From the IMG/VR virus record IMGVR_UViG_3300008261_000001, positions 124,001 to 188,000 of that record: 64,000 bases of DNA. One strand, 5' to 3'. The position numbers and the translations under genes were made by a program. Shown here in pieces: positions 21,910 to 52,415 of this stretch (its first letter is position 1; the number at the start of each line of letters is the position of its first letter). A model generated the notes under the pieces. That model did no database searches, had not been told where the DNA came from, and worked only from the letters and a program-made list of their open reading frames with translations.

Positions 21910-23766
21910 ATGAGTTTATCTTCAGTAGCAATAGCTGCCAGTGCTAAGGCAGGTAAACAATCTGAACACAATGCGGATATTATTGAGTTTGTCGAAGCCT
22001 CTTGGGGGCTGAAGATGACTCTTTTCCCTGTGCAGAAGGTTATCCTAAAAGCCCACTATGGGTTAGAGTTGGACGACACCAAGAAGTTTACGATTACCGA
22101 TTGGAGGAGACAGAACGCCCGTCATGTCACTGAAAAGGAGTACTTAAAAATCCTCTTTGAAGAGGGTAGATGCAACATAGGAGAGGTCATCCCTGGCAAA
22201 CAAAGGCGAGAGATGATTTTGTCCATAGGTCGTAGATCTGGTAAGACGACTATTTCCGCGTGTATAGCCGCTTACGAGACATACAAGCTCATTAAGAAGG
22301 GCGACCCTCAGAGATATTATGGGTTGCCCGCCTCTAACAATATACAGATTATTTCTGTGGCTACGGATAAAGACCAAGCTGGATTACTTTATCAAGAGGT
22401 GTCAGGACACTATCGCAACTGCTCGTTCTTTGGTCCATACACAGCGAATAACACCCTAAGCTACGCTCGTTTCCAAACACCTGCGGATGTGGACAAATAC
22501 GGAAGGTACTTGGACGATCCTTCTGCTAAAGCCACTCTGAAAGTGACTTTTAGGTCGTGTGTGGCGAAGGGTCTTCGTGGTGCAGGTAATATCTGTGTGA
22601 TACTCGACGAGGTGGCTCACTTTACGGATAAAGGTCAGTCAGGTGCAGAGGAGGTGTACAACGCGGTAGTACCTTCTACTTCTGCATATTCACCCAAAGA
22701 TCCCGTAAATCCCACTAAACCTATCGGTGAGGTGGAGGGTCGAGTTATCCTTATTTCTTCACCTTTAGGGAAGCAAGGGCTGTTTTACAATCTGTTTCAG
22801 ATAGGTATGCAAGGTGGTGCTGCTTCGGATAATATTCTAGCTGTGCAAGCTCCTACATGGGAGGTGAACCCTACGGTACCTGCGAGCGAGTTCGAAAAGC
22901 ATTACCTCAAAAATGCCACCGTGTTCTTTACAGAGTATGGAGGCGAGTTTACGGATAGAACTCGTGGTTGGTTGGAGTCGGCAGAAGACCTTTATGCGTG
23001 TGTAGATCCTAAACTAAAGCCCTCTACTTCCGCACCAGCTAGGAAACCCCACTACATGGGCATCGACTTGGGTTTGGTAGGGGACGCAAGTGCTATAGCT
23101 ATTGGACACCTAGAGGGTGATAAGATAGTGTTGGACTTGGTAGATCAGATTAAAGCAGGCGAGGGTAAGTACAAGGACAAGGAACGCTTGGACTTTGATG
23201 AGGTGGCGGATTGGATACATGGATGGAGTAAGAAGTTTTACATATCCGAGGCTATCTTCGACCAATGGGTGGGCATCCCTCTACAGCAAGCCCTAGAAAA
23301 GAGGGGTCTGAAACAGATGGTGTCGGTTAATATGACAAAGCAGTTAACCTCACAGATGTTCCAAAACTTTAAGGATATGATGTGGGACAGCAGACTGAAA
23401 CTCTACGACAAGCCAAACCCAGAAGTTAACGGTCATGAGCCTTATCTCTTAGAGTTGTTGGAGCTACAAGCGACTGTACACTCTAAGAACATAATCTCAG
23501 TCGAAGCACCCCAAGTAGCTGGCAAGCACGACGATATGTCGGATGCCCTTGTGCGTATGATATGGGTAGCTTCTAACCATATAGGCACACAGAAGCATTT
23601 CGCCATATCAGGCGGATCTTATAGACACCCCTTAGCGGCGGGTTCTAAGGTACTAGCCCAAGCGAGCTATGTGAGAGGTGGTAGCGATGAGAGGCGTATG
23701 GCACCTAAAGCACCTCGTCCAACATTGAGGGACGCTATCAATAAACGCTTTGGTGGCGGTGTTTAA
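21910..23766 (+). CDS. terL: Terminase large subunit
   Basis: GRRSGKT, VILDEVAHF, LISSPLG, YMGIDLG, HDDMSDA. Confidence 0.92.
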   Translation: MSLSSVAIAASAKAGKQSEHNADIIEFVEASWGLKMTLFPVQKVILKAHYGLELDDTKKFTITDWRRQNARHVTEKEYLKILFEEGRCNIGEVIPGKQRREMILSIGRRSGKTTISACIAAYETYKLIKKGDPQRYYGLPASNNIQIISVATDKDQAGLLYQEVSGHYRNCSFFGPYTANNTLSYARFQTPADVDKYGRYLDDPSAKATLKVTFRSCVAKGLRGAGNICVILDEVAHFTDKGQSGAEEVYNAVVPSTSAYSPKDPVNPTKPIGEVEGRVILISSPLGKQGLFYNLFQIGMQGGAASDNILAVQAPTWEVNPTVPASEFEKHYLKNATVFFTEYGGEFTDRTRGWLESAEDLYACVDPKLKPSTSAPARKPHYMGIDLGLVGDASAIAIGHLEGDKIVLDLVDQIKAGEGKYKDKERLDFDEVADWIHGWSKKFYISEAIFDQWVGIPLQQALEKRGLKQMVSVNMTKQLTSQMFQNFKDMMWDSRLKLYDKPNPEVNGHEPYLLELLELQATVHSKNIISVEAPQVAGKHDDMSDALVRMIWVASNHIGTQKHFAISGGSYRHPLAAGSKVLAQASYVRGGSDERRMAPKAPRPTLRDAINKRFGGGV

Positions 23767-23819: not shown

Positions 23820-24071
23820 ATGACCGAGCCCATTTATCCAAAGAGTCGTAAGAGGGCGGACTACAGGGTGATAGCGAGGATCTTGGAGTTAAGCCACGGT
23901 CAGAACCACCCAAGTGATGACTTGCTAGAGGAGATTTCCATTTTCTACAAGAGCAAGGGGGGGACTTGGGTAAAGTTTTTTGAGGGTAATCCGGATCATA
24001 ATAAGTTATTAAAAGCAGCGATCTCGTTTATAATGAAGCAAAAGAAGGAGCTGTATGATAGACGACAATGA
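23820..24071 (+). CDS. Hypothetical protein
   Basis: 83 aa, GGGAG RBS, between terL and portal. Confidence 0.65.
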   Translation: MTEPIYPKSRKRADYRVIARILELSHGQNHPSDDLLEEISIFYKSKGGTWVKFFEGNPDHNKLLKAAISFIMKQKKELYDRRQ

Positions 24072-25740
24072 TGAGATGGGTAAGCCTGTAGCCGAGATTA
24101 AACAGAAATCTAAGGTGAGCACGAGGAAGTTGTCTCCAACGGAGATGAAGTCCCGTGTTAAGGTCGCTATGACCACAGGCGGTTCGATGATGGGTAGCGG
24201 TGGAAACTTCTACTCACCTGAACTATCCACAGATTTCTTAGAGCTACCCCAAAGCCAAGACGAGCAAAGGAACTACTTTAGGTTCTTTTATCGCACGGAT
24301 CCCTTTGTGGGGCAAGCGGTGGACTTACACACAGAGTTGCCGTTATCCAAAATCCGCTTGGGGTTGCCCAAAGCTAAAAATAGGGATATGGCTTATGAGG
24401 CGTTGCGGTTTTGTGAGAAGTGGTCGAAGCGTGTGGGTTTGCTTCATAGGCTCATAGAGATACTGCACGAGTACAACCTTTTGGGTGAGGTGTTTGTTTT
24501 CTGTGAAGACAATAACCCCGATATGCCCAAGACGGTCACACACAAGAAGATCAATAAGCTCACTCGTGAAGGGGAAGCGATTGAGGATTGGGAGGAGTAC
24601 GAGGACTCTCTAGATAGAGCTTACAAGTGGCTTAAAAAGAACTATAAGGGTTGGACAAGCCTAAAGGTATTGCCACCCGAACAAGTACATATGGAGACTT
24701 TTCCATTTACATCCGAAAAGATCGTGGAACTGATTCCAGACTCCAAGACAAAGGCGGTGGTGGAGCGAGCTTCCATGCAAGACCCCTCTGCAATGAGGGT
24801 CGTAGAGTCAATGCCTTCTGATGTAGTGGAGGCACTAAGGGAGGGTCGCAACATCCCCTTAAACACAGATCCAGATGCTGGTAGCTTTGTGTACTTCATG
24901 GCTCGTAAGAAGTCTCAGTATGAGCCAAGAGGTCACTCTATCCTAGAACGCTGTCTGCGTATCCTTATTTACAGGGATAAGCTGAGGCAAGCCCAGACCT
25001 CGATAGCGTCTAGACACATGACACCCATACGCCTTGTCTATGCGGAAGACATGGACGCGGCTGATGTCGAGGCGTTGCGTGACCAAGTGGACTTAGCTCT
25101 GCAAGACCCAGATTACTCGATCATTGCTAACTTCCAAGTGTCTTGGGAGGAGATGGGTGCTGATTCGCGTCTATTGGACTTGAGCGGTGAGTACGATATG
25201 ACGGATAGACAAATGTACGCGGGCTTAGGCGTGACTGAGTCTCTGTTGTCGGGCGAGTCTAGCTACTCAGGCGATAGGATAAACCTAGAGGTCATTAACA
25301 CACGCTATATGCTCATGCGTGAAGTGCTTCAAGAGATGGTGGAGGAAAATATCCTAAAGCCCATGTGTAAGCGTATGGGCTTCATAGAGGAAGACGAGGA
25401 CGGAGAAGAGGTAGTCGTTCACCCAACCTTGAGCTTTACTCGCTTAGGGTTGAGGGATAACCAAGACACCTTTGACGCTCTCTTTAATCTCTATCAGAAG
25501 GGTTCTTTGGACATCGACATCATCTTGGAGTTGTTGAACATAGACCCACAGACGACCAAAGCGAAGCTAGAGAGGGATATGTTCACGCTGAACGACTCTC
25601 AGTTCAACGAGGTGTTGAGGGGCATTTATGGAGATGCAGGGTCTAAGCTGGCTGAAAACTCTGACGCGATAGAGCGTATCGCTAGAAATCTAGGTTTGAA
25701 GTACACACCTCCAGCGGATGAAGATGGCGGTCGGTTCTAA
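24055..25740 (+). CDS. Portal protein
   Basis: 561 aa after terL; FYRTDPFVGQAVDLHTELPLSK, RGHSILERC, GLGV..SLLSGESSYS. Confidence 0.8.
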   Translation: MIDDNDEMGKPVAEIKQKSKVSTRKLSPTEMKSRVKVAMTTGGSMMGSGGNFYSPELSTDFLELPQSQDEQRNYFRFFYRTDPFVGQAVDLHTELPLSKIRLGLPKAKNRDMAYEALRFCEKWSKRVGLLHRLIEILHEYNLLGEVFVFCEDNNPDMPKTVTHKKINKLTREGEAIEDWEEYEDSLDRAYKWLKKNYKGWTSLKVLPPEQVHMETFPFTSEKIVELIPDSKTKAVVERASMQDPSAMRVVESMPSDVVEALREGRNIPLNTDPDAGSFVYFMARKKSQYEPRGHSILERCLRILIYRDKLRQAQTSIASRHMTPIRLVYAEDMDAADVEALRDQVDLALQDPDYSIIANFQVSWEEMGADSRLLDLSGEYDMTDRQMYAGLGVTESLLSGESSYSGDRINLEVINTRYMLMREVLQEMVEENILKPMCKRMGFIEEDEDGEEVVVHPTLSFTRLGLRDNQDTFDALFNLYQKGSLDIDIILELLNIDPQTTKAKLERDMFTLNDSQFNEVLRGIYGDAGSKLAENSDAIERIARNLGLKYTPPADEDGGRF

Positions 25741-25902
25741 TAGATTATTTATACTCCAAGATAGCGGATAGGTTAACCCTTAACCCAACCCCTGTCTTGG
25801 AGTAATCAAGATGAGAACAGCATCGGAAGTATTAAGAAGCCTTGAGGCTCGTATCGCTCGTTTAGAGGGTCGCACAGCTTCTTCAAAGAGAAGTGCAAGC
25901 CT
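25725..25902 (+). repeat. Direct repeat copy 1 (portal 3' end + promoter + UTR hairpin + leader codons)
   Basis: Near-identical to 26380-26557. Confidence 0.92.
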
Positions 25903-26293
25903 TACCCCCCACCTTCGTAAAGTTTCTTCGATGATGAAATTAAACTTCAAAGTGTACACAGATGACTATGACCTTTCAGAGGATGATAGGGATATGCTCC
26001 TTGATTCCGCTGTTAAGCACCTAAGTAAAGTATTCGGTGGGAGGGTAAGTATTGATGGTGGTAGTTATGGAGAGTTTCATCTGTGCAGTATGGGTGTGAC
26101 TCTAAAAGAGGCAGGGGAGATTATGAGTCTTGTGGAAAGAAAAGATGTTGGTCATCTCACCATACCCGTAGGAATGGGAGCCTCCCCCGTTTACGCACAA
26201 GACTTCTATCTAAGTGATGTTCGTGGGAAAACTATTGCTGAGGGAGATGATCTGATTGAGTATCTTACTAATGCAGGTGTGATGATCAACTAA
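25811..26293 (+). CDS. MRTASEVL-leader cargo protein 1
   Basis: Shared 31-aa leader; GGAG RBS. Confidence 0.85.
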   Translation: MRTASEVLRSLEARIARLEGRTASSKRSASLTPHLRKVSSMMKLNFKVYTDDYDLSEDDRDMLLDSAVKHLSKVFGGRVSIDGGSYGEFHLCSMGVTLKEAGEIMSLVERKDVGHLTIPVGMGASPVYAQDFYLSDVRGKTIAEGDDLIEYLTNAGVMIN

Positions 26294-26379
26294 GCCTTAG
26301 TGCTAAGTTTATTAGTGGTTTTGACTCAATAAACCCTTTATGAACCAACACCCCTAGATTTATCGCCCATAATGAACCC

Positions 26380-26557
26380 TGGCGGTCGGTTCTAATAGAT
26401 TATTTATACTCCAAGATAGCGGATAGGTTAACCCTTAACCCAACCCCTGTCTTGGAGTAATCAAGATGAGAACAGCATCAGAAGTCTTAAGAAGCCTTGA
26501 AGCTCGTATTGCCCGTTTAGAGGGTCGCACAGCTTCTTCAAAGAGAAGTGCAAGCCT
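26380..26557 (+). repeat. Direct repeat copy 2
   Basis: Near-identical to 25725-25902. Confidence 0.92.
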
Positions 26558-26963
26558 CACCGCCCCCCATCGTAAATCTGCCTCTCATAACGATATGGAC
26601 TATAAAGTTTGGACATATGATTTGATGTTCACTCTTTATCAAGAAGGCAGCATCCTTTCAGATGACGAACTGGAAAAAATGCTCAGAGCGAGTGTTAATG
26701 ATCTAACAAAGATATTTGACGAAAAAGTATATATTGAAGATTATATGGATGGGAGACTTTCATGCGGTATTTCAAATTTGGATCTAGAATCCGTCCATCG
26801 GATTATGAAATATGTGGATAGATTTGCTGTAGGTCCTTACACCATAGAAACAAGACGGGGATCAGGTGTTTACGCAAATGGCTTTGTGCTGTTGGACGAC
26901 AACTCCGGTCGCCGCGTGGCGGAGGGGGACGAACTGATGGATTTGCTTGAGAGGTGGGCGTAA
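26466..26963 (+). CDS. MRTASEVL-leader cargo protein 2 (distant paralog of cargo 1)
   Basis: Identical leader; cargo aligns weakly with 25811 (VGHLTI/VGPYTI, IAEGDDL/VAEGDEL). Confidence 0.85.
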   Translation: MRTASEVLRSLEARIARLEGRTASSKRSASLTAPHRKSASHNDMDYKVWTYDLMFTLYQEGSILSDDELEKMLRASVNDLTKIFDEKVYIEDYMDGRLSCGISNLDLESVHRIMKYVDRFAVGPYTIETRRGSGVYANGFVLLDDNSGRRVAEGDELMDLLERWA

Positions 26964-27035
26964 ATAGCCAATCAATAAACCCTTTATGAACCAACACCCC
27001 TAGATATAACTATCCAATATCTAGGGGTGTTGTTT

Positions 27036-27647
27036 ATGAGTCAGCACGAAAAGGATATGGGCTTATTGCCCATAATGAACCCTTTGTTCAACCTGCGTGA
27101 GATATGTAAGCAGATGGTGTTGCTAGAAGACCATCTGAACAATCCGCGTAAGCGTTGTCCCGACTGCATCTCAAAGCACTTCATCACAATAGAGGCTTTC
27201 TTTGAGGAAGCTATCTCATTGGATAAGGATTTGAAGTACAGCAAGCTCCTAGACGGCAAGGCTCAGATAATGAGGGACTTGCAGGGGTTGTGGTTGAAAT
27301 TCAAGGATACGGATAAAGAGGACAGGGGTTATGCCTTAGTAGCTCAGTTCTTGAGGCGACTGCGTAAGGACATACTGCCCATGTCGTTTGATGTAAGGAA
27401 GATGGCGTGTTTATCCGTTTCTTGTCCTCATCGGAAGCGTGTTGCTACCTTGACCCAAACGGAAAAAGAGGAGCGTGAGGTGGAGTCTCTAATCAAGACC
27501 TCGCCTAAGAAGAAGCCCCCTCGTAAGGATAAGATGAGGCGTAGGGTGGATGTTGAGGATAAAGATTTGGGTGGGAATAAGACCGACCCAGACCTCAAGA
27601 AAGCCTCTCTTATTCAGCGTGTGGTTGATCGCTATTTATCCCATTAA
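27036..27647 (+). CDS. Hypothetical protein with Cys/His cluster and basic tail
   Basis: LREICKQMVLLEDHL..RCPDCISKH; AATA-N5-TTTAT upstream. Confidence 0.7.
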   Translation: MSQHEKDMGLLPIMNPLFNLREICKQMVLLEDHLNNPRKRCPDCISKHFITIEAFFEEAISLDKDLKYSKLLDGKAQIMRDLQGLWLKFKDTDKEDRGYALVAQFLRRLRKDILPMSFDVRKMACLSVSCPHRKRVATLTQTEKEEREVESLIKTSPKKKPPRKDKMRRRVDVEDKDLGGNKTDPDLKKASLIQRVVDRYLSH

Positions 27648-27665: not shown

Positions 27666-30600
27666 ATGAATGTCTTTTCCTTATTGCGTGAAATAGAGGC
27701 TGTGGGCGAAAGGATTGAATCGCTCTCTAGGAGGGTGGGTTTAAATGTTCGCACAAGTGCTAAAAAGAAAAAGGATACCCCTCTCTCTGAACAAGCGAAA
27801 TCGAACTTAAAAGACAACACCTACAAGGATGTAGACACAAAAAAGGACATATCCTTTGGGACTGCTTTAAAGAAAGAGCACCCAAAGGCGGTCAAGGACT
27901 ACAAAAAGGAGTTGTCCAAAATAAAGGGAACGAAGAAGCCCCTAAAGAACTCAGAGTACAGATCGGGTGGTCAGTTTTCAGCCGATGTAAGAGTAGACCT
28001 TGAGGGGGCGTTCTCAAACGCGAGTGTAAGGGTGGATATTGAGAGCTTATCAATACCACAAGAAATGGGTATGAGAGCCGTTATAAGTGTTGTGGTTAAT
28101 GTGGCGACCGATATAGACGATGGCTATGAGTATGAGGAAAAGGAAAAAGGTGCTAGGAAACCTAAACAAAAGGGTTTGGATAAACAAAAGGGTTTGGATA
28201 AACAACAAGTCTTACCCAAAGACAAAAAGGCTCGTGTCAAAAAGATAAAAGATAAACTCGACGAGGTTTTACCCACACAGATAGATCTCCCCAACGGAGA
28301 AACCCTACCCGTTAATACGGAGGCTTTATCCAATATGACTACTGAGCGTCTAGAGGAGACACAAAAGACTCTAGACGCTCGTGCTGAGGAAAGGCAAGAA
28401 ACAGACTCCGAGTCTAAGGCTGATGAGAAGTCTTTATCCGAGCAGATAGAAAAGAAGATTTATTCGTCTAAGCTAAAGACAAGGGAAGAGCCAAGTGAGC
28501 TAGAGTCCGCGTTGAATCGGACAATAGATAAAATGTTCGAGGACGACGAGGGGTTTTTGAGTTCGGAGAAGGTACGGACTCAAAAGAGCGAGCTAAAGGG
28601 TCTTACGAGGTCGATTCAGTCGATGTCGCTCGAAGAGGCTGAGGAGGTGGCTAAGGCGTATGAGAAGCAAGGGGAGAGCCTCATAAACTCTTTTACGGGC
28701 AAAGACAGCGACTATGAGGGATTGAGTGAGCTTTACAAAGCCACACAAGAGGTTTTAAAAGCTGGGATACCTCAGAACCCTTTAGAGGATGAGGATATAG
28801 AGCATAAGCTCTTGGCGGAAGCCTCATTGGAAAAGTTATCCAAAGTCTCCAAACTCGATCAGCTAGAGACACTTAATGAAAAGCTAAAGGATAAGTCCCT
28901 TTCCAAAGAGGAAGCAAAAACCATTAAAGAGGAGATATCCAATATTGAGAAGGGAGCTAAAGCGTTATTGGAGGCAGAGGGCATTGATCCTTCAGCATAT
29001 AAAGCCTTCGTAGCGTACAGAAAGAATCCAGAAAAAGGGTTCAAAGATTTCGCCTCTGCTTTGGAAAAGTCCAAGTGGATGTCGGATAACTTAGAAGATA
29101 TACAAGGCGAGGTAGATCAAAAGAAGTCGGCTATAACCAAGCCCTACAGAGAGCAAGTTGGTAAGTATCTGGCGGCAAAAGCGATGGAGGAGGGATTTAT
29201 TCGAGATCCCATGTACGGAGTAAAGAGTATTGGAAAGACCGATATGAACGACTCTGATGTGGTAGCTCATCGCAGGCAGGTTAGGATAAACCAAGCTAGG
29301 CGATATAAGCAGATGAGTTCTGAAATACGCGATCTAGCCGTCCTAGAAACACAAGACTTATCCAATGACAACGCAAAGCTGATTGCAGAACTCGAAGAGA
29401 AACAATCTAAGGGTGAGGATGTATCCCAAGCCTTACAACAAGCGAGGGAGAAGCAGAATCAATATCAAGACACTCTTGCGGGCTTAAATACAGCAAGGCT
29501 TTTATTGGGTGAAAAGCCTATAGATGGTTTTCAAGAGGTCGATGAGAACCTCTTGAACTTAGCCAAGAGCGTAGACGACAATAATCTTTTAGAGGCGGTC
29601 TCCGTTTTAGGTTCACCCACAGGTGGGGGTAAAGACAGAGAACAAACACGGGAGGCTGTTAAGGGTGCCTTATCCGAAATGTCCTTAGATCGTTTTGGGC
29701 AGATCGTGGGAGATCAGTACGAGGATATGCTCGATGTCCTTAAACCCACTTACTGCCCATCTACACCAAAAAACGAAGCGGCAGGTTTAGCGGATAAACA
29801 TCTTACGGAGGGGCAGAAGTGTCCAGAGCCTTTAGACCCACGACTACATGACCTTATGCGTAGGTACATCACTGACTCGTATGCAGACACACAAAGCATA
29901 CGGAGTGAAGATAGGGGTGGTTTCGATGAAGGTAGATCGAAACAAGTATCCACTCAACAGCGTAAGGAGTTCAAAGAGCTTTGGGATAAAAGCAAAGAGG
30001 AAGTCCTAAAAGCCATAACCATGAGCGAGGACGACCCCGCATATGATGAAGACGCTGTGGTGAGTACCCTAGAGCTATTTGGGTTGGAACTGAGGATGAG
30101 GAACTATGAAACGCTGATGGTGGACGGCAAGAAGATAGTCGGTCATGAAGCCATCATGAAGTACATCCGCAAGGTTCAAGAAATGGATAAGAAGGAGCGA
30201 GAGAAAAAGGTAAAGGAGTTGGCGAAGCAGTTTGAAGATTTCTTAAAGCAGAATGAACCTGAGGCTTCTGAAACACCCCCTCGTACAGCAAATATATTTA
30301 ATAAATCTTTTATAGACCCACGCTTAAATATCGCAGGAGACTTTCTTATGAAGAAAAGTGCGACAACCTATGTGGACTATCAAGCTCTAGCCTCAACATT
30401 TGAGGTTGGGATGAGTGTATTTACGCATAGTGGTGGCGATCCTGCTCGATCAGGTGTTGTGGTTGCCGTATTTCCAGCTATTGGAATGGTCGATGTACAG
30501 TTTCCACACGGAAGCACTCGTCTCCCAGTAGAGGATCTTGTCATTGACCATACTAAAGAAATAGCACCACTACCGGATAGTTTGATATCCGTACCTGGCG

Positions 30601-30858: not shown

Positions 30859-32244
30859 ATGGCTTTTTTAAGATATGCTAAGGCTAATGTGGTCAATCCT
30901 CAACTCAACTTTAAGGGTTGGGATAAGGTGCGTGTGGCGAGTGGTTCTAAATCTTCATTGGGTGGTGGATTGGTTCAGAAAGCCCAAGACATCTTGGGTG
31001 AGCCTTGCACACCTGAGAGGTTTTTACTTACCCACTCAACCATAGTCTGTTCAGTAGATGCGGTAACCGTTCCTAACTCCAAGACGGGTTCTATCGTAGA
31101 GCAAGGCTTAAAGATTAACCGCAAGTACGCTAATTGGCGAGTCACATCTGAAACGGATAAGTTCATAAATAACAACCTAGATTGTTGGTCTAGGGAGGTT
31201 ATTATGAAGTCCTACAAGACTTTCATTGGGGCTCAGAACTTTTTGGAGCATATACAGGTTGAAGAACTCTCTAAGGGTCGGATTATTGATGCTGTTCTTC
31301 GAGATGTTGGTGAATCTTTATATGTGGACATCTTGGTAGCCACTGACAGAAAACACACCGACTTGGTTAATCAAATAATCAAGGGCGAAATGAACGCCAT
31401 GAGCATGGGTTGTTCTGTAGAGGCGACCATATGCACCAAGTGCGGTCATGTGGCTGCGGATGAGACTGAGTTCTGTCCCCATGTGAAGTACGAAAAGGGA
31501 AATGTCTTTTATGACGAACAGGGTAATAAGCACCGAGTTGCAGAACTCTGTGGACATGAGGACATGGGCGAGACAGGTGGCGTGACTTTTATTGAGGCAT
31601 CTTGGGTGGCAACCCCTGCCTTTAAGGGTGCAGTCACTCGTAATATCCTTGAGCTTCCTCAGACTAAACAAGCCTCAGAAGCTATCCTAAATCAAATCCC
31701 ATCGGCTTGGTTATCCAAAGTGGCTGGTCCGTTTGATGACGAGGAAGAAGATGCAGGAGAGGAAGCTCCCGCTGAACCCCCCAAGTCACTTATGCAACAG
31801 CTAGAGGATGTGTATCAGACAGCTATCCTCGATAGGTTGCGTGTAAAGCTAGAGAACGAAATCAAAGAGGAACAGGCTAAGTTAGTCTTAAATCCTCCTA
31901 TTGATAAGTCCACGGCTGAACAGAACGACACCGTCATTAAAGAAGGGTCTCGTACTCTAAAGAAATCCTACTTAAAGGCATTAGAGTTAAGTATTAAGAC
32001 TGCCTCTAGCATAGACGAGGCAGTCTTGAACTTATCTTTGGTTAATAGCCATTATGGGGTAAAGATACCTGCTCACATTTATAAGCTCGCCCAAAAGCTA
32101 GGGTCGGCTTCTAACTTTAAGAGCGTAGACTCTTACCTCAAGCAAGCCAATGTTTTACATGGCTCAAATCTTTCTGAGTCGGATAAGGTAAAACTTATCC
32201 GATTTGCAAAGCTCCTCTCCCTCCACCAATCGGGCAGAAAATAA
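30859..32244 (+). CDS. Prohead (capsid maturation) protease with Zn-finger insert
   Basis: NFLEH, GRIIDA, MSMGCSV..ICTKCG..CPH, FIEASWVATPAF; upstream of scaffold and capsid. Confidence 0.75.
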   Translation: MAFLRYAKANVVNPQLNFKGWDKVRVASGSKSSLGGGLVQKAQDILGEPCTPERFLLTHSTIVCSVDAVTVPNSKTGSIVEQGLKINRKYANWRVTSETDKFINNNLDCWSREVIMKSYKTFIGAQNFLEHIQVEELSKGRIIDAVLRDVGESLYVDILVATDRKHTDLVNQIIKGEMNAMSMGCSVEATICTKCGHVAADETEFCPHVKYEKGNVFYDEQGNKHRVAELCGHEDMGETGGVTFIEASWVATPAFKGAVTRNILELPQTKQASEAILNQIPSAWLSKVAGPFDDEEEDAGEEAPAEPPKSLMQQLEDVYQTAILDRLRVKLENEIKEEQAKLVLNPPIDKSTAEQNDTVIKEGSRTLKKSYLKALELSIKTASSIDEAVLNLSLVNSHYGVKIPAHIYKLAQKLGSASNFKSVDSYLKQANVLHGSNLSESDKVKLIRFAKLLSLHQSGRK

Positions 32245-34530: not shown

Positions 34531-35409
34531 ATGAGCAATACCGTAGATAATGCAGTCAAGCAGAAGATCATTAGCGACTACATCAAGACCCCTCAAGGTC
34601 GTGCTAAGTTAGCCGCTTCGATGACTCAGCCTTTGCGTCTCCGCAGAGACTACACCTCTGTCGGTCGCAAGACTTTCCTTGTTGAGCAGTTGCCCGATGG
34701 TGCTCTGCCCATCTATGACAAGGATCCCGATGTGACCGCGTTCGTGGTTGGTGAAGAGGGTCAGAACATCCTCGCTATCACCAAGCCCCGCCGTGTGATC
34801 TTCCCCTTGTTCGAGATTGCCTCGAACCCTGAGATCCCCTTAACTCAGATTAAGGAGAGGCGTTTCGACCTCATCGAAAGGGCTCAGGATCTCGCAAGGG
34901 CTCAGATCCAAGCCGCTGAGGATGAGCGTGTATTCGCTATCCTTGACGCTGTGGCAACACAGGGCTTCGACAGCCTCCCTGGTCAGACCAACGCTGACAT
35001 CCCTGTCATCGCTCCCCTCAATGGTGCGGTGCTTGCGGATGCGTTCTCGCTCATCGAGCGTCACGACCTTCGCGTAGCTCGCGTGTTCATGAACGCTCGT
35101 GACTATGCAGACATCAGAAAGTTCGGTCGTGACATCCTCGACATCGAGAGCCAAGCGGCACTCTTAAAGACAGGTCTACAGGCTACCCTTTGGGGCTCTC
35201 AGATCATCACCTCACGCCTCGTGCCTGTTGGTACGGTGTATGTGTGCTGTGAGCCTGAGATGTTCGGTCGTATCCCTGTTCGTACAGAGCTTACCGTTCT
35301 CTCAGCGGACGATCCTAAGGCTCGTACCATCGGCTTCTCCGTGTTCGAGAACCTCGGTATCGGTGCATACAACCCCCGTGGTCTTGCCCGTCTCACCGTG
35401 ACCCGCTAA
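34531..35409 (+). CDS. Major capsid protein (HK97 fold, encapsulin-like size)
   Basis: GRAKLAASMTQPLR, FEIASNPEI, IQAAEDERVF, VFMNARDYADIRK, ENLGIGAYNPRG; strong RBS; terminator follows. Confidence 0.85.
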   Translation: MSNTVDNAVKQKIISDYIKTPQGRAKLAASMTQPLRLRRDYTSVGRKTFLVEQLPDGALPIYDKDPDVTAFVVGEEGQNILAITKPRRVIFPLFEIASNPEIPLTQIKERRFDLIERAQDLARAQIQAAEDERVFAILDAVATQGFDSLPGQTNADIPVIAPLNGAVLADAFSLIERHDLRVARVFMNARDYADIRKFGRDILDIESQAALLKTGLQATLWGSQIITSRLVPVGTVYVCCEPEMFGRIPVRTELTVLSADDPKARTIGFSVFENLGIGAYNPRGLARLTVTR

Positions 35410-35592: not shown

Positions 35593-36261
35593 ATGAAGAT
35601 GATAAGATCAGCCAGTCTATCGCAAGAAGATCAAAGAGTGATTCAACTCTTTACCTATAGAGAAAAAGGTCAATCCAAAAGCATGAACTCTACGGGGGAT
35701 CGTTTAGATGGACCAGGACCAGAACTAAAGGGGGTTGCATTTTGGGAAAACGACCAAATTTGGTTTGTGGAAAAGGGATCTAGAACAGGACAACAAATCC
35801 ACAAATTGATTAAAAAGTTGAACCCTTATCCAGAGGTTTTGGGTGGTTATAAAAAGGAAGCACCCATGTTGGTTATGAGAAGATCAGCAAGCGAAGTATT
35901 AAGAAGTCTAGAGCAGAGAGTCGCATCCCTTGAGGCACAAGCGGCTCGCCTTGTTCTGCCTAGCAGGGCTAGGATGAAGGGCAAGAGGGTCGGTAAGAAA
36001 GACTTATCCGATTTGCTTATGGAGTTTATCAGTTCTGAGTACATGAGCGGGGGAGACGAGTTCTCTAGCTTTAACTTAGATGGCGATAAGTTCTCATTTC
36101 AGATCATGACAGACGATGGGGACGAGACTTTTTGGGCGGGCAAAATCATCGACAGAGGTGTTGCTCAGTCCGCACTCCTTAGCCAAGACAGCTATGCCCT
36201 AGAGGACGCTGTGATGGTTAAGCGTGATAGAAACCGAGACAGCGGTTTCGGTTATCGCTGA
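35593..36261 (+). CDS. Two-module cargo protein with internal MRRSASEVL leader
   Basis: N-terminal MKMIRSAS; internal MRRSASEVLRSLEQRVASLE at 35875. Confidence 0.8.
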   Translation: MKMIRSASLSQEDQRVIQLFTYREKGQSKSMNSTGDRLDGPGPELKGVAFWENDQIWFVEKGSRTGQQIHKLIKKLNPYPEVLGGYKKEAPMLVMRRSASEVLRSLEQRVASLEAQAARLVLPSRARMKGKRVGKKDLSDLLMEFISSEYMSGGDEFSSFNLDGDKFSFQIMTDDGDETFWAGKIIDRGVAQSALLSQDSYALEDAVMVKRDRNRDSGFGYR

Positions 36262-36290: not shown

Positions 36291-36686
36291 ATGAATATGA
36301 GAACTGCAAGCGAAGTATTAAGAAGTCTAGAGGCTCGTATTGCTCGCCTCGAAAGTCGCACCGCAGGTGCGACCAATAAGACTGCTAATGAGATAGCCAC
36401 TACTATCCTTCAACAGCTTGGTGGTAGTCGCAAGTTGCAGATGATGATTGGTCTCAAGCAAGTCATTAGTGATCCTCTAGGTGTCACGCTAGTGTTCCCT
36501 TTGCCTTCACATGAGGGTGCTGTAAATCGTGTCCGTATCACTCTTAATGGGCTTGATCTTTATGATATGGATTTTATCCGTACTAGAGGTACTAGCCAAA
36601 AGGTGGTTAAAGAGTTTGATAATGTCTATGCAGAGGACTTGAAGAGTATGTTTGAGAAAGGGACAGGTCTTTACATTAGGTTCTAA
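36291..36686 (+). CDS. MRTASEVL-leader cargo protein (IAxTILQQLGG...TGLY domain)
   Basis: Leader followed by a domain I recall as a common stand-alone phage hypothetical. Confidence 0.8.
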   Translation: MNMRTASEVLRSLEARIARLESRTAGATNKTANEIATTILQQLGGSRKLQMMIGLKQVISDPLGVTLVFPLPSHEGAVNRVRITLNGLDLYDMDFIRTRGTSQKVVKEFDNVYAEDLKSMFEKGTGLYIRF

Positions 36687-39384: not shown

Positions 39385-39449
39385 TTTTAAGGGTTCTATG
39401 AGCCTATCACTATAGACACGCACCCCCTTCTTTGAGAGAGAGGTCACAC

Positions 39450-40100
39450 ATGAGAAATCTAATGTCACGCCCAACAGCTAGACGGGTCTATATGGACGAG
39501 AGTATTGAAGCTCTGTCTCCTAATATGAGTGACAGCAAGGATTATTATGGAGACCTTACAACTGCGGAAAACCACATTTACTTCTATCAAGAGGTGACCC
39601 CCAAGACCATCATGAAGCTTGGGCTTGCCATCAAGTCCATCGAACAACAGCTTATAAACCTCGCCACCAATCTGAGCTTATCCCAAGTCCCAGCTATCCA
39701 TTTACACATAAACTCAGGTGGTGGCTGTGCCTTTAGCGGTCTTGCAGGTGCAGGACATATCCTTAACTCTCAAATCCCCGTCTTCACCTATGTAGAGGGA
39801 AATGCCGCTTCAGCCGCCACGATCATGTCGTGTGTTGGTGCGAAGCGTTTCATCACCGAACATAGCTTCATGCTTATCCACCAAGTAAGTACAGACTTCT
39901 GGGGCACCTATGAAAATCTTAAAGATGAAAAAGAGTCGATGGATGCACTCATGGATATGGTGTCTAGCATCTACTTGAAGCACACAGGACTGAAAAAGAA
40001 ACAGCTCAAGGCGTTGCTCAAGCGGGACTTATTCCTTAACGCTGAGTCTTGCCTTGAGCTGGGTCTTGTCGATGAGGTTATGAACTTCGAGAGGGTCTAG
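39450..40100 (+). CDS. clpP: ClpP-like protease subunit
   Basis: LHINSGGG, GNAASAAT, MLIHQ, RDLFLNAESCLELGLVD. Confidence 0.88.
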   Translation: MRNLMSRPTARRVYMDESIEALSPNMSDSKDYYGDLTTAENHIYFYQEVTPKTIMKLGLAIKSIEQQLINLATNLSLSQVPAIHLHINSGGGCAFSGLAGAGHILNSQIPVFTYVEGNAASAATIMSCVGAKRFITEHSFMLIHQVSTDFWGTYENLKDEKESMDALMDMVSSIYLKHTGLKKKQLKALLKRDLFLNAESCLELGLVDEVMNFERV

Positions 40101-48005: not shown

Positions 48006-48566
48006 ATGGATATGAGAACTGCAGGTGAAGTATTAAGAAGCCTAGAGTACAGAATAGCTCGTTTAGAGCGTCAGTCTGCTCGTGTTCGCCCACCAGCTCC
48101 ACAGCGTACTCCATCCACTAGGGGTCGTATGAAAGATCTGTCTGTACACTCAGACCTTCTAACTGCTTTGCAGTTGATCTATCATTACTCTGAAGCTGAC
48201 AGATTGGCTTTCACAAGTGAGTTGTCGAGTTATAAGGGTGTTTTTGAGGTTGGTGGGTGGCCAGGAACTCATTACGACTCAGCCACTAATAGTATTGTTT
48301 TCTACCTTACCCTAGAGGGCAATCCTAACACAATTCACCGTTTGGCTGATAAATATGGCATAAATATCATAGATGTTTCCATAAAGTTAGACGGACAGAA
48401 GAACGATAAGACCGTCTATGAGTTGGGTTTGAGCTTAGACTCGGCTAAATACAAGGGTGTTTGGAAGGAGTTTATGGGCAACGCTTCTATGCAGAACACC
48501 CTTCGTGAGCTTCCTGAAGCTGTAAGACGCTCGGAGCGTTTGTTCTTTGGTATCGACTTTAAGTAA
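48006..48566 (+). CDS. MRTAGEVL-leader cargo protein
   Basis: MDMRTAGEVLRSLEYRIARLERQSA leader; AATA-N5-TTTAT at 47956. Confidence 0.85.
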   Translation: MDMRTAGEVLRSLEYRIARLERQSARVRPPAPQRTPSTRGRMKDLSVHSDLLTALQLIYHYSEADRLAFTSELSSYKGVFEVGGWPGTHYDSATNSIVFYLTLEGNPNTIHRLADKYGINIIDVSIKLDGQKNDKTVYELGLSLDSAKYKGVWKEFMGNASMQNTLRELPEAVRRSERLFFGIDFK

Positions 48567-51296: not shown

Positions 51297-52415
51297 ATGT
51301 TCCACCATTTGACGCTTGCCGTGAGGGATAGGATAATCAAGGAGTTTAGGGAGTATTGGGCGGATCACCCTAGATATCCTGATTTGGCTCAGAACATACA
51401 AGGTAAGTATTCGTTTGATGAGCGTCCTCAGTTTGGCATGGTGGTCAAAACGGGTGGTGCAAGCAATGTGGTTTTATCCAATGATAACTACATGGGCATA
51501 ATAGAGGGCTATGTGTCATTGGCACAGGTTCCTCCGTACAAGGGTAAATCCATCGAGTGGGTTCGGGACGATATGATGAAGACTCCAGAAGAGGGGGTGT
51601 ACATCATATCCATTATTGAGCCGACTGTAGAGGTGGAAGACCCCTACATAAAGTATGCGGTTATCCAAAAGTACAGACGGGTTCATGAAACCTCTTTGAT
51701 TTTTAGCTCGCCTACGGAGATTTCCTTATTGGGTGAGCCGATAGAAAACTCGTTGAGGTTGATAGAGTATCCGTCAGGTAGGTTATTGAGTTCGTCCGAG
51801 TACACCTTAGATGGTTCTACGGTGACTTTAACGGAGGCGTTGCCCTCATCTAAGTTGAGGTTAGAGGCGAGGTACACCGAGCAAGACGCACAGACAGGTC
51901 CTTATGCGGTACAGCCAGCGTTGGCTTACAGAAATCTAATCAATGGTGTGGTGGTGGCTTTTGGTCGTGAGCTAGAGGCTGGGGATAAGATGGCAGTTTT
52001 GGTGGAGGGTACGAGGACACAAGTAAGCAAGGAATATGGTGGGCGGTGGGACATAAGCGTAGATGTAGATTTGGTAACGAGGGATGTCCACTCACAGGCG
52101 GACATAGCGGATAAGACGGTGGTGTGGCTGTGGTCTATTTTAAGACCGAAGTTATCCACTATGGGTCTGGAGTTATCGAATGTGTCGTTAGGGGGAGAGG
52201 GAGAGGAGGCGTATGACGACAATGGGGATGATTATTTCTACACAGCGTCTATATCTTTCACGATCCAAGCCGATTGGTTTATCCATTATCCGTTAGTTAT
52301 TCCGATCTTGTCGGTGTCTACAAACAATGTGGTGCCGATGGAGTTGATGCCTATGGGTCAACCGATAGTGGGTGTTGGAAACTCGGACAGCTTTAGACAG
52401 CGGATTATTGGATAG
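51297..52415 (+). CDS. Probable tail terminator/sheath stabiliser
   Basis: Just upstream of sheath; beta-rich; FYTASISFTIQADW. Confidence 0.5.
   Translation: MFHHLTLAVRDRIIKEFREYWADHPRYPDLAQNIQGKYSFDERPQFGMVVKTGGASNVVLSNDNYMGIIEGYVSLAQVPPYKGKSIEWVRDDMMKTPEEGVYIISIIEPTVEVEDPYIKYAVIQKYRRVHETSLIFSSPTEISLLGEPIENSLRLIEYPSGRLLSSSEYTLDGSTVTLTEALPSSKLRLEARYTEQDAQTGPYAVQPALAYRNLINGVVVAFGRELEAGDKMAVLVEGTRTQVSKEYGGRWDISVDVDLVTRDVHSQADIADKTVVWLWSILRPKLSTMGLELSNVSLGGEGEEAYDDNGDDYFYTASISFTIQADWFIHYPLVIPILSVSTNNVVPMELMPMGQPIVGVGNSDSFRQRIIG

What the first reader, a model, noticed from the sequence alone, without database searches (positions are those of the whole stretch)
25725..27083. Tandem cassette array with near-identical flanks but highly diverged cargo
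25725-25902 and 26380-26557 are near-identical and include the last codons of the portal gene (GGCGGTCGGTTCTAA). The downstream flank is also repeated (26326-26359 = 26972-27005), and 26360-26380 copies a piece of the next gene's coding start (27063-27083). Yet the two cargo domains share only scattered motifs. Inference: two distant alleles of one cassette slot were stacked by recombination through conserved flanks, as described for the T-even IPI locus.
Basis: partly seen in the sequence, partly recalled or inferred. Interest (0 to 1): 0.6.

Follow-up and report, generated by a model that had tools for sequence, protein, structure and literature searches.

The report
Stacked alleles of a leader-tagged phage gene
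Just after the portal gene of a 290-kb uncultured freshwater phage, two very different versions of one small gene sit in tandem inside near-identical flanks, and both carry an N-terminal tag shared by at least 16 genes of this phage, which resembles the way phage T4 labels proteins for packing into its head.

Summary
Three repeat pairs were found: 25725-25921/26380-26576 (197 nt, 95%), 26326-26362/26972-27008 (36/37) and 26360-26380/27063-27083 (20/21). They frame gene A (25811-26293) and gene B (26466-26963).

A and B are homologs. Their first 32 residues are identical. Their cargo domains are 36% identical, with synonymous sites saturated (dS 1.15). The novel joint at 26380 fuses codon 16 of the next gene to the last five codons of the portal gene. 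This is a head-to-tail duplication of the whole slot, made by an illegitimate join.

It is not an assembly artefact, because three separate contigs carry it. Close relatives carry A alone, B alone, a fused two-domain form, other genes, or nothing at this site.

The main new result is the shared 5' flank. It is a promoter-like box, a hairpin holding the ribosome-binding site, and a 19-residue leader (MRTASEVLRSLEARIARLE). This module heads at least 16 otherwise unrelated ORFs in the genome and more in relatives.

I read it as an analogue, not a homolog, of the T4 internal-protein leader. Packaging and cleavage are inferred and untested.

The parts
24055..25740 (+). Portal gene. Its last 16 nt (25725-25740) open repeat D1.
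   Evidence: phrog_16240 portal, E 6e-35. tblastn finds portals of LR745208.1 (66%) and Bacillus phage G (27%).
25741..25810 (+). 5' module, copy 1: promoter-like TTTATA box (25748-25753), hairpin 25752-25804 with the GGAG ribosome-binding site (25799-25802) in its 3' arm.
   Evidence: RNA fold -29.6 kcal/mol, z -5.7. The same architecture, with arms that differ in sequence yet stay complementary, precedes other leader genes. No sigma-70-type promoter was found.
25811..26293 (+). Gene A, 160 aa: leader (residues 1-19/20), disordered Ser/Arg/Lys linker (about 20-38), alpha/beta cargo domain (42-154).
   Evidence: ORF. AlphaFold2 model: helix 4-18, pLDDT below 50 for residues 20-38, folded domain 42-154. 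Orthologs at 81-91% sit alone in the same slot in L060-L063.
26326..26362 (+). Repeat D2, copy 1: the left half only of the 3' hairpin. The 54 nt that follow in copy 2 (27009-27062: right arm and start of the next gene) are missing here.
26360..26380 (+). Remnant of next-gene codons 10-16 (repeat D3, copy 1), ending at the duplication joint. The T at 26380 is shared with the portal remnant.
   Evidence: 20/21 match to 27063-27083. Logan unitigs 26330-26409 (run X1) and 26330-26465 (run X4) span the joint.
26380..26395 (+). Remnant of the last 16 nt of the portal gene (GGRF codons plus stop), non-functional here.
   Evidence: 16/16 match to 25725-25740.
26396..26465 (+). 5' module, copy 2 (hairpin 26407-26459), 70/70 identical to copy 1.
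26466..26963 (+). Gene B, 165 aa: same leader and linker as A, with a cargo 36% identical to A.
   Evidence: B is known only from this strain.
26972..27040 (+). Repeat D2, copy 2, with the complete 3' hairpin (26983-27040). Its right arm overlaps the start codon of the next gene.
   Evidence: RNA fold -30.8 kcal/mol, z -6.4. Conserved in the A-only and B-only relatives.
27036..27647 (+). Next gene (203 aa, function unknown), the right border of the slot. 27063-27083 is the source of D3.
   Evidence: Its homologs directly follow the portal gene in LR745208.1 and in L011-L013.
35878..36261 (+). Another leader-bearing reading frame, in the head module just after the major capsid gene.
36297..36686 (+). 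Another leader-bearing gene (129 aa) with an unrelated cargo.
48012..48566 (+). Another leader-bearing gene (184 aa) with an unrelated cargo.

Best explanation
The gap between the portal gene and the next gene is a variable accessory-gene slot in a clade of huge freshwater phages.

Shown: in the window's lineage the slot first held one gene (allele A), as it still does in the closest relatives. An illegitimate join between codon 16 of the next gene and the fifth-last codon of the portal gene then produced a head-to-tail duplication of the whole slot.

Inferred: the second copy carries allele B, a very divergent homolog that cannot have diverged in place. Either the join happened between two co-infecting near-identical phages that differed only in the allele, or an A-A duplication had one cargo replaced by homologous exchange through the shared leader (5') and hairpin (3'). 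The 100-197-nt direct repeats now allow loop-out, which gives the B-only and A-only forms seen in other samples.

Function, inferred by analogy: each gene is an autonomous cassette made of a phage promoter-like box, a hairpin holding the ribosome-binding site, a 19-residue amphipathic leader, a disordered linker and a small alpha/beta cargo. The leader heads at least 16 unrelated ORFs. It most likely directs proteins into the procapsid and is removed by the head protease after the invariant Leu-Glu, as the T4 capsid-targeting sequence is. The cargos would then be packaged, possibly injected, accessory proteins under an arms race.
For: Structure
- Repeats and joint.
- Identity runs 100% over 80 nt, then 95%, 92% and 85%, then drops abruptly to about 55-60%. 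It returns to 97% in D2.
- Cargo dS is 1.15-1.7, against 0 substitutions in the 86-nt non-coding stretch with the portal remnant.

Recency
- The two untranslated copies are identical to each other.
- They share derived states against the A-only relatives L060-L063.

Population forms
- Tandem: the window's own record, L010 and L064, all 100% identical.
- A alone: L060-L063, with 98.4% identical portals.
- B alone: L066, another contig seen in 3 samples, and Logan contigs in runs X2 and X5. X2 has a SNP at 25765 and no joint contig.
- Empty: L011-L013 and LR745208.1.
- Other leader genes in the same slot: L023, L028 and L038.

Leader
- It stands at the N-terminus of 16-17 ORFs whose cargos are unrelated.
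- Synonymous sites are near saturation (pS 0.62) while the peptide is kept (pN 0.23, concentrated at positions 13 and 20).
- It is present in relatives: 16, 7 and 3 matches in three genomes. Leader-only matches turned up in the 1.8-billion-protein search.
- The model shows helix 4-18, then a disordered linker, then a folded domain.

Context
- The slot lies in the head module: terminase, portal, protease-like 461-aa gene, major capsid protein, and a ClpP-like head maturation protease.

Selection
- A alleles show cargo dN/dS of about 0.75-1.5.

T4 precedent for a shared leader on unrelated injected proteins: PMC12373910, PMC3012670, PMC5694885.
Against: - There are no virion proteomics. Packaging, cleavage and injection are all inferred.
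- The leader has no sequence similarity to the T4 targeting sequence and is about twice as long.
- No protease of the T4 (PF03420) or HK97 (PF04586) type was found.
- Allele B was found nowhere outside this strain, so no donor lineage is known.
- The B-only contigs are short and otherwise identical to the tandem strain, so some may be assembler collapses across the 100-nt exact repeat.
- The A-only structure could in principle also arise from the tandem by D2 x D2 deletion.
- The 54-nt gap after copy 1 is unexplained.
- dN/dS rests on few substitutions.
- The cargo fold (generic ferredoxin-like) gives no functional hint.
Confidence: 0.6

Rival explanations
1. An ancient duplication in place. 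A and B arose by one old tandem duplication and diverged where they are, while the flanks were kept near-identical by repeated gene conversion or selection.
For: A and B are true homologs of the same length and architecture. The leader is under strong purifying selection. Recombination between repeats clearly operates here, given the 655-nt loop-out form.
Against: The functionless remnants are also near-identical: 16 nt of portal at 16/16 and 21 nt of the next gene at 20/21. The untranslated 70 nt are 70/70. Identity drops abruptly rather than gradually. Four A-only lineages with cargo dS of only 0.05-0.15, and the empty-slot relatives, would each have had to lose B. Cargo dS between A and B is about ten times larger than among A alleles.
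Confidence: 0.1
2. The tandem is an assembly artefact: two strains with different alleles were stitched together at shared flanks.
For: The samples contain mixtures. A-variant and B-only contigs co-occur in run X2, and assemblies break at the repeats.
Against: The joint sequence (next-gene fragment fused to portal fragment, 26360-26395) exists in neither single-allele form, so stitching cannot create it. It stands in three separate contigs (the window's own record, L010 and L064). It also stands in k-mer unitigs of two runs.
Confidence: 0.02
3. The evolutionary reading is right, but the leader is not a capsid-targeting propeptide. It would be a coiled-coil oligomerisation or docking helix for another structure (tail, baseplate, membrane or replication compartment), or a tag for regulated proteolysis by the ClpP-like protease.
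For: Leu/Ile at positions 8, 11, 15 and 18 give a heptad-like amphipathic helix. Leader genes are spread over the whole genome rather than only in the head module. A ClpP-like gene is present.
Against: The leader is strictly N-terminal. Conservation ends sharply after Leu-Glu and is followed by a disordered linker. Several leader genes flank the portal and capsid genes. The only well-studied precedent for one leader on many unrelated small phage proteins is capsid targeting (PMC12373910, PMC3012670).
Confidence: 0.28

Closest known systems
T-even phage internal protein (Ip) loci with the capsid-targeting leader (Repoila et al. 1994, as cited in PMC2839356, PMC12373910 and PMC3012670)
   Same: One N-terminal leader is shared by small proteins with no other similarity. 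The genes are non-core and vary between close relatives. Several sit side by side in a hot spot. Promoter/stem-loop elements flank them. Alleles are swapped.
   Different: There is no sequence similarity (no PHROG or Pfam hit). The leader is about 19 residues of amphipathic helix plus a roughly 18-residue disordered linker, against 10-20 residues in T4 (PMC5694885). At least 16 genes are spread over the genome instead of two loci. The phage is unrelated to T4: distant phage-G-like portal, 292-aa capsid protein, ClpP-like protease. Packaging, cleavage and injection are untested.
PeSL promoter/stem-loop cassettes of T4-type phages (PMC2839356, PMC4122927)
   Same: A short conserved promoter-plus-stem-loop module precedes variable genes. 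It coincides with insertion, deletion and replacement differences between close relatives.
   Different: The module here has a TTTATA box, not a sigma-70-like early promoter. Its hairpin holds the ribosome-binding site. It continues into a conserved coding leader. The stacking joint itself lies outside the module. Circular intermediates were not tested.
Segmental tandem amplification in T4 under selection by host defence (PMC9391042; the details are from my own knowledge of that paper)
   Same: A head-to-tail repeat of an accessory-gene segment, created by a join at minimal homology and unstable through repeat recombination.
   Different: The copies here are not identical. One holds a saturated-divergence allele, so this is allele stacking rather than dosage amplification.
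Propeptide-bearing and paralogous head or ejection proteins of giant phages SPN3US and phiKZ (PMC5694885, PMC10052503)
   Same: Giant phages package many extra proteins, several of them paralogous, and process them with the prohead protease at N-terminal propeptides.
   Different: Those propeptides are mostly long (over 100 residues) and are not one shared short leader. The clades are unrelated. There are no proteomic data for this phage.

Membership tests
T4-type internal proteins with capsid-targeting sequence | One N-terminal leader shared by proteins that are otherwise unrelated | tested here: met
   16-17 ORFs carry the leader. Only A and B have similar cargos.
T4-type internal proteins with capsid-targeting sequence | Sequence homology to known Ip or targeting-sequence families | tested here: not met
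   No Pfam, PHROG or NCBIfam family for A or B. No structural match in PDB or BFVD.
T4-type internal proteins with capsid-targeting sequence | Leader removed by the prohead protease at a consensus site | not testable with these tools
   The only observation is that conservation stops after an invariant Leu-Glu. Protease-like genes lie at 30859-32244 and 39432-40100.
T4-type internal proteins with capsid-targeting sequence | Protein present inside the capsid and injected with the DNA | not testable with these tools
   Uncultured phage with no proteomics.
T4-type internal proteins with capsid-targeting sequence | Genes lie in a hyperplastic locus that differs between close relatives | tested here: met
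   The slot holds 0, 1 or 2 genes, or other genes, in relatives.
PeSL-type mobile regulatory cassettes | A repeated promoter-plus-stem-loop motif upstream of variable genes | tested here: met
   TTTATA box plus hairpin before leader genes, with arms that differ but stay complementary.
PeSL-type mobile regulatory cassettes | Sigma-70-like early promoter and G/C-rich stem | tested here: not met
   No sigma-70-type site upstream of A or B. The stem is mixed in composition and holds the ribosome-binding site.
PeSL-type mobile regulatory cassettes | Indels between close relatives are bounded by the motif | tested here: inconclusive
   The 655-nt B-only deletion is bounded by the D1 repeats, which contain the module. 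The duplication joint itself lies in coding remnants outside it.
Simple tandem gene duplication (amplification) | Head-to-tail copies with one novel joint | tested here: met
   Joint at 26380, with next-gene and portal remnants.
Simple tandem gene duplication (amplification) | Copies diverged uniformly along their length | tested here: not met
   Flanks are 95-100% identical. The cargo is about 55-60% identical in nucleotides, with dS above 1.

The most novel reading that the evidence does not exclude
The 19-residue leader is a general capsid-loading and propeptide tag of a clade of uncultured freshwater huge phages. If so, sequence alone would define the set of at least 16 proteins per genome that are packed into the head and delivered to the host. 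The promoter-hairpin-leader module would also serve as the portable homology that moves and swaps these cargo genes between loci and between phages. The portal-proximal slot would be an arms-race hot spot where alternative anti-defence alleles are stacked.
Probability: 0.4. Interest if true: 0.7.

Novelty: new variant of a known kind. Interest (0 to 1): 0.55.

Why it matters
Huge phages are almost all uncultured, and most of their genes have no assigned function. A leader that marks packaged proteins would give a sequence-only way to list the candidate virion-internal, possibly injected, proteins of a whole clade. It would also supply a ready tag for loading foreign proteins into such capsids.

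The locus is a clean natural example of how phage accessory genes diversify. The empty, A-only, B-only, fused and stacked states all co-exist in nature. The stacking joint and the loop-out products are both visible.

Tried and rejected
Searches that found nothing
- Pfam, PHROGs and NCBIfam gave nothing for A, B or the next gene.
- Rfam found nothing in 25400-27400.
- Foldseek of the A model against PDB and BFVD gave no match at E <= 0.001.
- The ESM Atlas gave only generic ferredoxin-like look-alikes, TM 0.5-0.59.
- T4-type (PF03420) and HK97-type (PF04586) prohead protease families are absent from the genome.
- The word search and the full HMM search found no B-type protein outside this strain. 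They found only two further distant cargo relatives, P0011 and P0014. P0011 lies at a different locus in another phage.

Steps that could not be run
No verdict.
- Repoila et al. 1994 (PMC395341) is not held. Its content is cited only through later papers.

Limits of the data
- Read laying had only Logan contigs, no raw reads. Depths could therefore not be used to estimate the proportions of the forms.

Readings considered and dropped
- Conservation of the leader as a purely nucleotide or RNA element: dropped because synonymous sites are near saturation.
- Targeted hypermutation of one copy: dropped because A and B differ by indels and at all base types.
- Integron-type cassettes: no recombination-site repeats flank the units. 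A recombinase was not searched for.

Full report
**Setting**

The window is bases 124001-188000 of a 290,179-base linear virus record. The finding lies in the head module, which reads in this order:
- large terminase (21910-23766);
- an 83-aa gene;
- portal (24055-25740; phrog_16240, E 6e-35);
- gene A (25811-26293, 160 aa);
- gene B (26466-26963, 165 aa);
- a 203-aa gene of unknown function (27036-27647);
- a 1062-aa gene;
- a 461-aa gene with a head-maturation-protease-like region (30859-32244);
- an EF-hand protein;
- the major capsid protein (34531-35409; phrog_2522, E 3e-51);
- further on, a ClpP-like head maturation protease (39432-40100).

The portal is 66% identical to that of the 485-kb uncultured phage LR745208.1 and 27% identical to that of Bacillus phage G. 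The runs that hold the stretch are mostly lake, drinking-water and other freshwater or aquatic metagenomes, with a few lagoon, ballast-water and aquaculture samples.

**The observation**

All three repeat pairs exist.
- D1 is 25725-25921 = 26380-26576: 197 nt at 95%, with the first 100 nt identical.
- D2 is 26326-26362 = 26972-27008: 36/37.
- D3 is 26360-26380 = 27063-27083: 20/21.

D1 starts with the last 16 nt of the portal ORF. D3 is part of codons 10-16 of the next gene. Apart from the leader-coding part of D1, these pieces occur nowhere else in the 290-kb genome: D2, D3 and the 70-nt untranslated stretch match nothing else, and the 16-nt portal remnant matches elsewhere only at 2-3 mismatches.

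A and B align over their whole length. The first 32 residues are identical, and the cargo is 36% identical at E 2e-17.

**Anatomy of the joint**

The first unit ends with the left arm of a strong 3' hairpin, then the next-gene fragment, then the portal fragment. The T at 26380 belongs to both fragments. The array is therefore a head-to-tail duplication of the segment 'last 16 nt of portal to codon 16 of the next gene'. It was made by a join with 1 nt of overlap.

After copy 1, the 54 nt corresponding to 27009-27062 are absent. These would be the right arm of the hairpin and the start codon of the next gene. As a result only copy 2 keeps the complete hairpin (26983-27040; -30.8 kcal/mol, z -6.4).

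**Age of flanks against cargo**

Identity between the two units is:
- 80/80 for the first 80 nt;
- 38/40, 37/40 and 34/40 for the next three 40-nt windows;
- abruptly about 55-60% across the cargo;
- 97% again in D2.

By Nei-Gojobori counts the cargo has dS 1.15 and dN 0.68. The first 32 codons have dS 0.30 and dN 0. The 86 non-coding or remnant bases upstream have no change at all.

Functionless remnants that are still identical beside a saturated cargo cannot result from divergence in place. The cargo of one copy must come from a different lineage.

The two untranslated copies are identical to each other and share derived states against the A-only relatives, so the duplication is recent in this lineage. 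B's linker codons 31-37 are closer to the relatives' A than the window's own A is. That places the 5' exchange point just after codon 37. On the 3' side, homology with the A-only relatives resumes at 26955, inside B's last codons.

**Relatives**

Fifty portal-bearing IMG/VR loci, LR745208.1 and contigs found through the proteins give every state of the slot.

| State | Where seen |
|---|---|
| Empty (portal to next gene 39-106 nt) | LR745208.1, L011-L013 (93% portal identity) and many others |
| A alone, with the complete 3' hairpin | L060/L061 (A 91%), L063 (81%); portal of L060 98.4% identical |
| Fusion: leader + an unrelated ~120-residue domain + linker + A cargo in one ORF | L062 |
| B alone | L066 (the window minus exactly 25725-26379, otherwise 100% identical); a second contig seen in three samples; Logan contigs in runs X2 and X5 |
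| Tandem A+B, 100% identical | L010 (81-kb IMG/VR contig), L064 (33-kb NCBI metagenome contig); unitigs spanning the joint in X1 and X4 |
| Other leader-bearing genes with different cargos | L023, L028, L038 |
| Unrelated genes | L032/L035/L043 and L052-L054 |

Two details matter for the B-only form. The X2 contig carries a SNP at 25765, and X2 shows no joint contig.

Caveat: the B-only contigs are short, and an assembler can collapse a 100-nt exact repeat. The lack of any joint contig in X2 argues that at least that one is real. Only contigs could be laid on the stretch, not raw reads, so proportions cannot be given.

**Order of events (inferred)**

A alone is the older state. It occurs in four diverged lineages, whereas B is known only from the window's strain. 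The joint contains pieces of both slot borders, so it formed from single-cassette genomes.

There are two possible routes:
- One illegitimate crossover between two co-infecting, nearly identical phages that differed in the allele.
- An A-A duplication followed by homologous replacement of one cargo through the leader and the 3' hairpin.

The data do not separate the two routes. Recombination between D1 copies then gives B alone (the exact 655-nt skip). Recombination between D2 copies would give A alone.

**The shared 5' flank is a dispersed module**

A search of the phage's own genome with protein A found the first 20-30 residues at the N-terminus of many ORFs. A small profile finds 16 strong matches and one weaker.

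All matches start within a few residues of the ORF's first Met. They read M-R-(R)-T/S-A-S-E/D-V-L-R-S-L-E-x-R-I/V/L-A-R-L-E and then diverge completely. Outside A and B, the cargos show no similarity to one another.

Across the 16 copies, synonymous sites are near saturation (pS 0.62, including switches between the two serine codon families). Non-synonymous change (pN 0.23) is concentrated at positions 13 and 20. It is therefore the peptide that is conserved, not the DNA.

Most copies are preceded by a TTTATA box and a hairpin whose 3' arm contains the GGAG ribosome-binding site. The arms differ in sequence between copies but remain complementary. For A and B this hairpin folds at -29.6 kcal/mol, z -5.7. 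No sigma-70-type promoter is present.

Related huge phages carry the leader too: 16, 7 and 3 matches in three genomes. None was found in a fourth genome or in LR745208.1. The exhaustive profile search returned further leader-only matches with new cargos.

Among A alleles, the leader shows more synonymous change than the cargo. For the window against L060 the counts are 7.5 changes per 24 synonymous sites in the leader and 4 per 82 in the cargo. L060's variant shares a 15-nt run with another leader copy of the window genome. I read this as conversion between leader copies. That is an inference.

**What the proteins may do**

The AlphaFold2 model of A has mean pLDDT 71. It shows a helix at residues 4-18, a low-confidence linker at 20-38, and a compact alpha/beta domain at 42-154.

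The fold is generic ferredoxin-like and matches nothing informative.

The combination of features matches what is known for the T4 internal proteins. These features are:
- a strictly N-terminal shared helix;
- a sharp end of conservation after Leu-Glu;
- a disordered linker;
- unrelated small cargos;
- a position in the head module;
- presence/absence and allele polymorphism;
- cargo dN/dS near 1 (0.75-1.5, on few substitutions).

[quoted passage not shown] The T-even Ip loci are also flanked by promoter/stem-loop elements thought to drive their shuffling (PMC2839356).

I therefore propose capsid targeting, with removal of the leader by one of the two protease-like gene products. This is analogy, not homology.

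**Verdict**

The repeats are real. The array is genuine and polymorphic in nature. The correction is that the stack was made by an illegitimate join, and the identical flanks are its product.

The more interesting result is the genome-wide promoter-hairpin-leader module. It makes this an independent analogue of the T4 Ip system in an unrelated clade of uncultured huge phages.

I rate it a new variant of a known kind, with interest 0.55.

Noticed in passing
window 35593-36261: This ORF starts with the usual TTTATA-hairpin module and a decayed leader (MIRSASLSQEDQRV...). It then contains a second, intact leader at about residue 96 (MRRSASEVLRSLEQRVASLE). It looks like two cassettes fused into one reading frame, as in L062.
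   Followed up: partly
L062:3823-4656: In this close relative the portal-downstream gene is 277 aa: leader, an unrelated ~120-residue domain, then the SSKRSASLT linker and the A cargo. This is a second way of stacking two cargos in the same slot.
   Followed up: partly
G000:C1:45009-45077 (outside the window, minus strand): A leader-only remnant: the leader peptide is followed by RRR and a stop, with no cargo.
   Followed up: no
window 26330-26540, in run X4: Run X4 holds A at 100% identity and the duplication joint, but no contig covers the B cargo (26606-26940). Loose ends there continue into other leader variants (LEQRIARLEGRT). The second position may hold yet another allele in that sample, or paralogs from other loci were laid at 90% likeness.
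   Followed up: no
window 25748-25804 and upstream of other leader genes genome-wide: The promoter-like TTTATA box directly abuts the 5' arm of the hairpin that sequesters the ribosome-binding site. Transcripts started at the box might lack the full 5' arm and be translatable. Read-through transcripts from the portal gene would fold and be silent. This logic is known for some T4 late genes (my own knowledge) and was not tested.
   Followed up: partly
window 28163-28198: A perfect 18-nt tandem duplication inside the 1062-aa gene encodes a repeated KQKGLD.
   Followed up: no
L067:407-910: P0011, a third and very divergent member of the A/B cargo family, carries the same leader and TTTATA box. 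It lies at a different locus in another phage, next to an RNaseH-like gene and a homolog of window 51297-52109. The cargo family is therefore not tied to the portal slot.
   Followed up: partly
window 25811-25930: At least one public gene call starts A at Met41 (a 120-aa product), which misses the leader. Automatic annotation may systematically hide this leader family.
   Followed up: no
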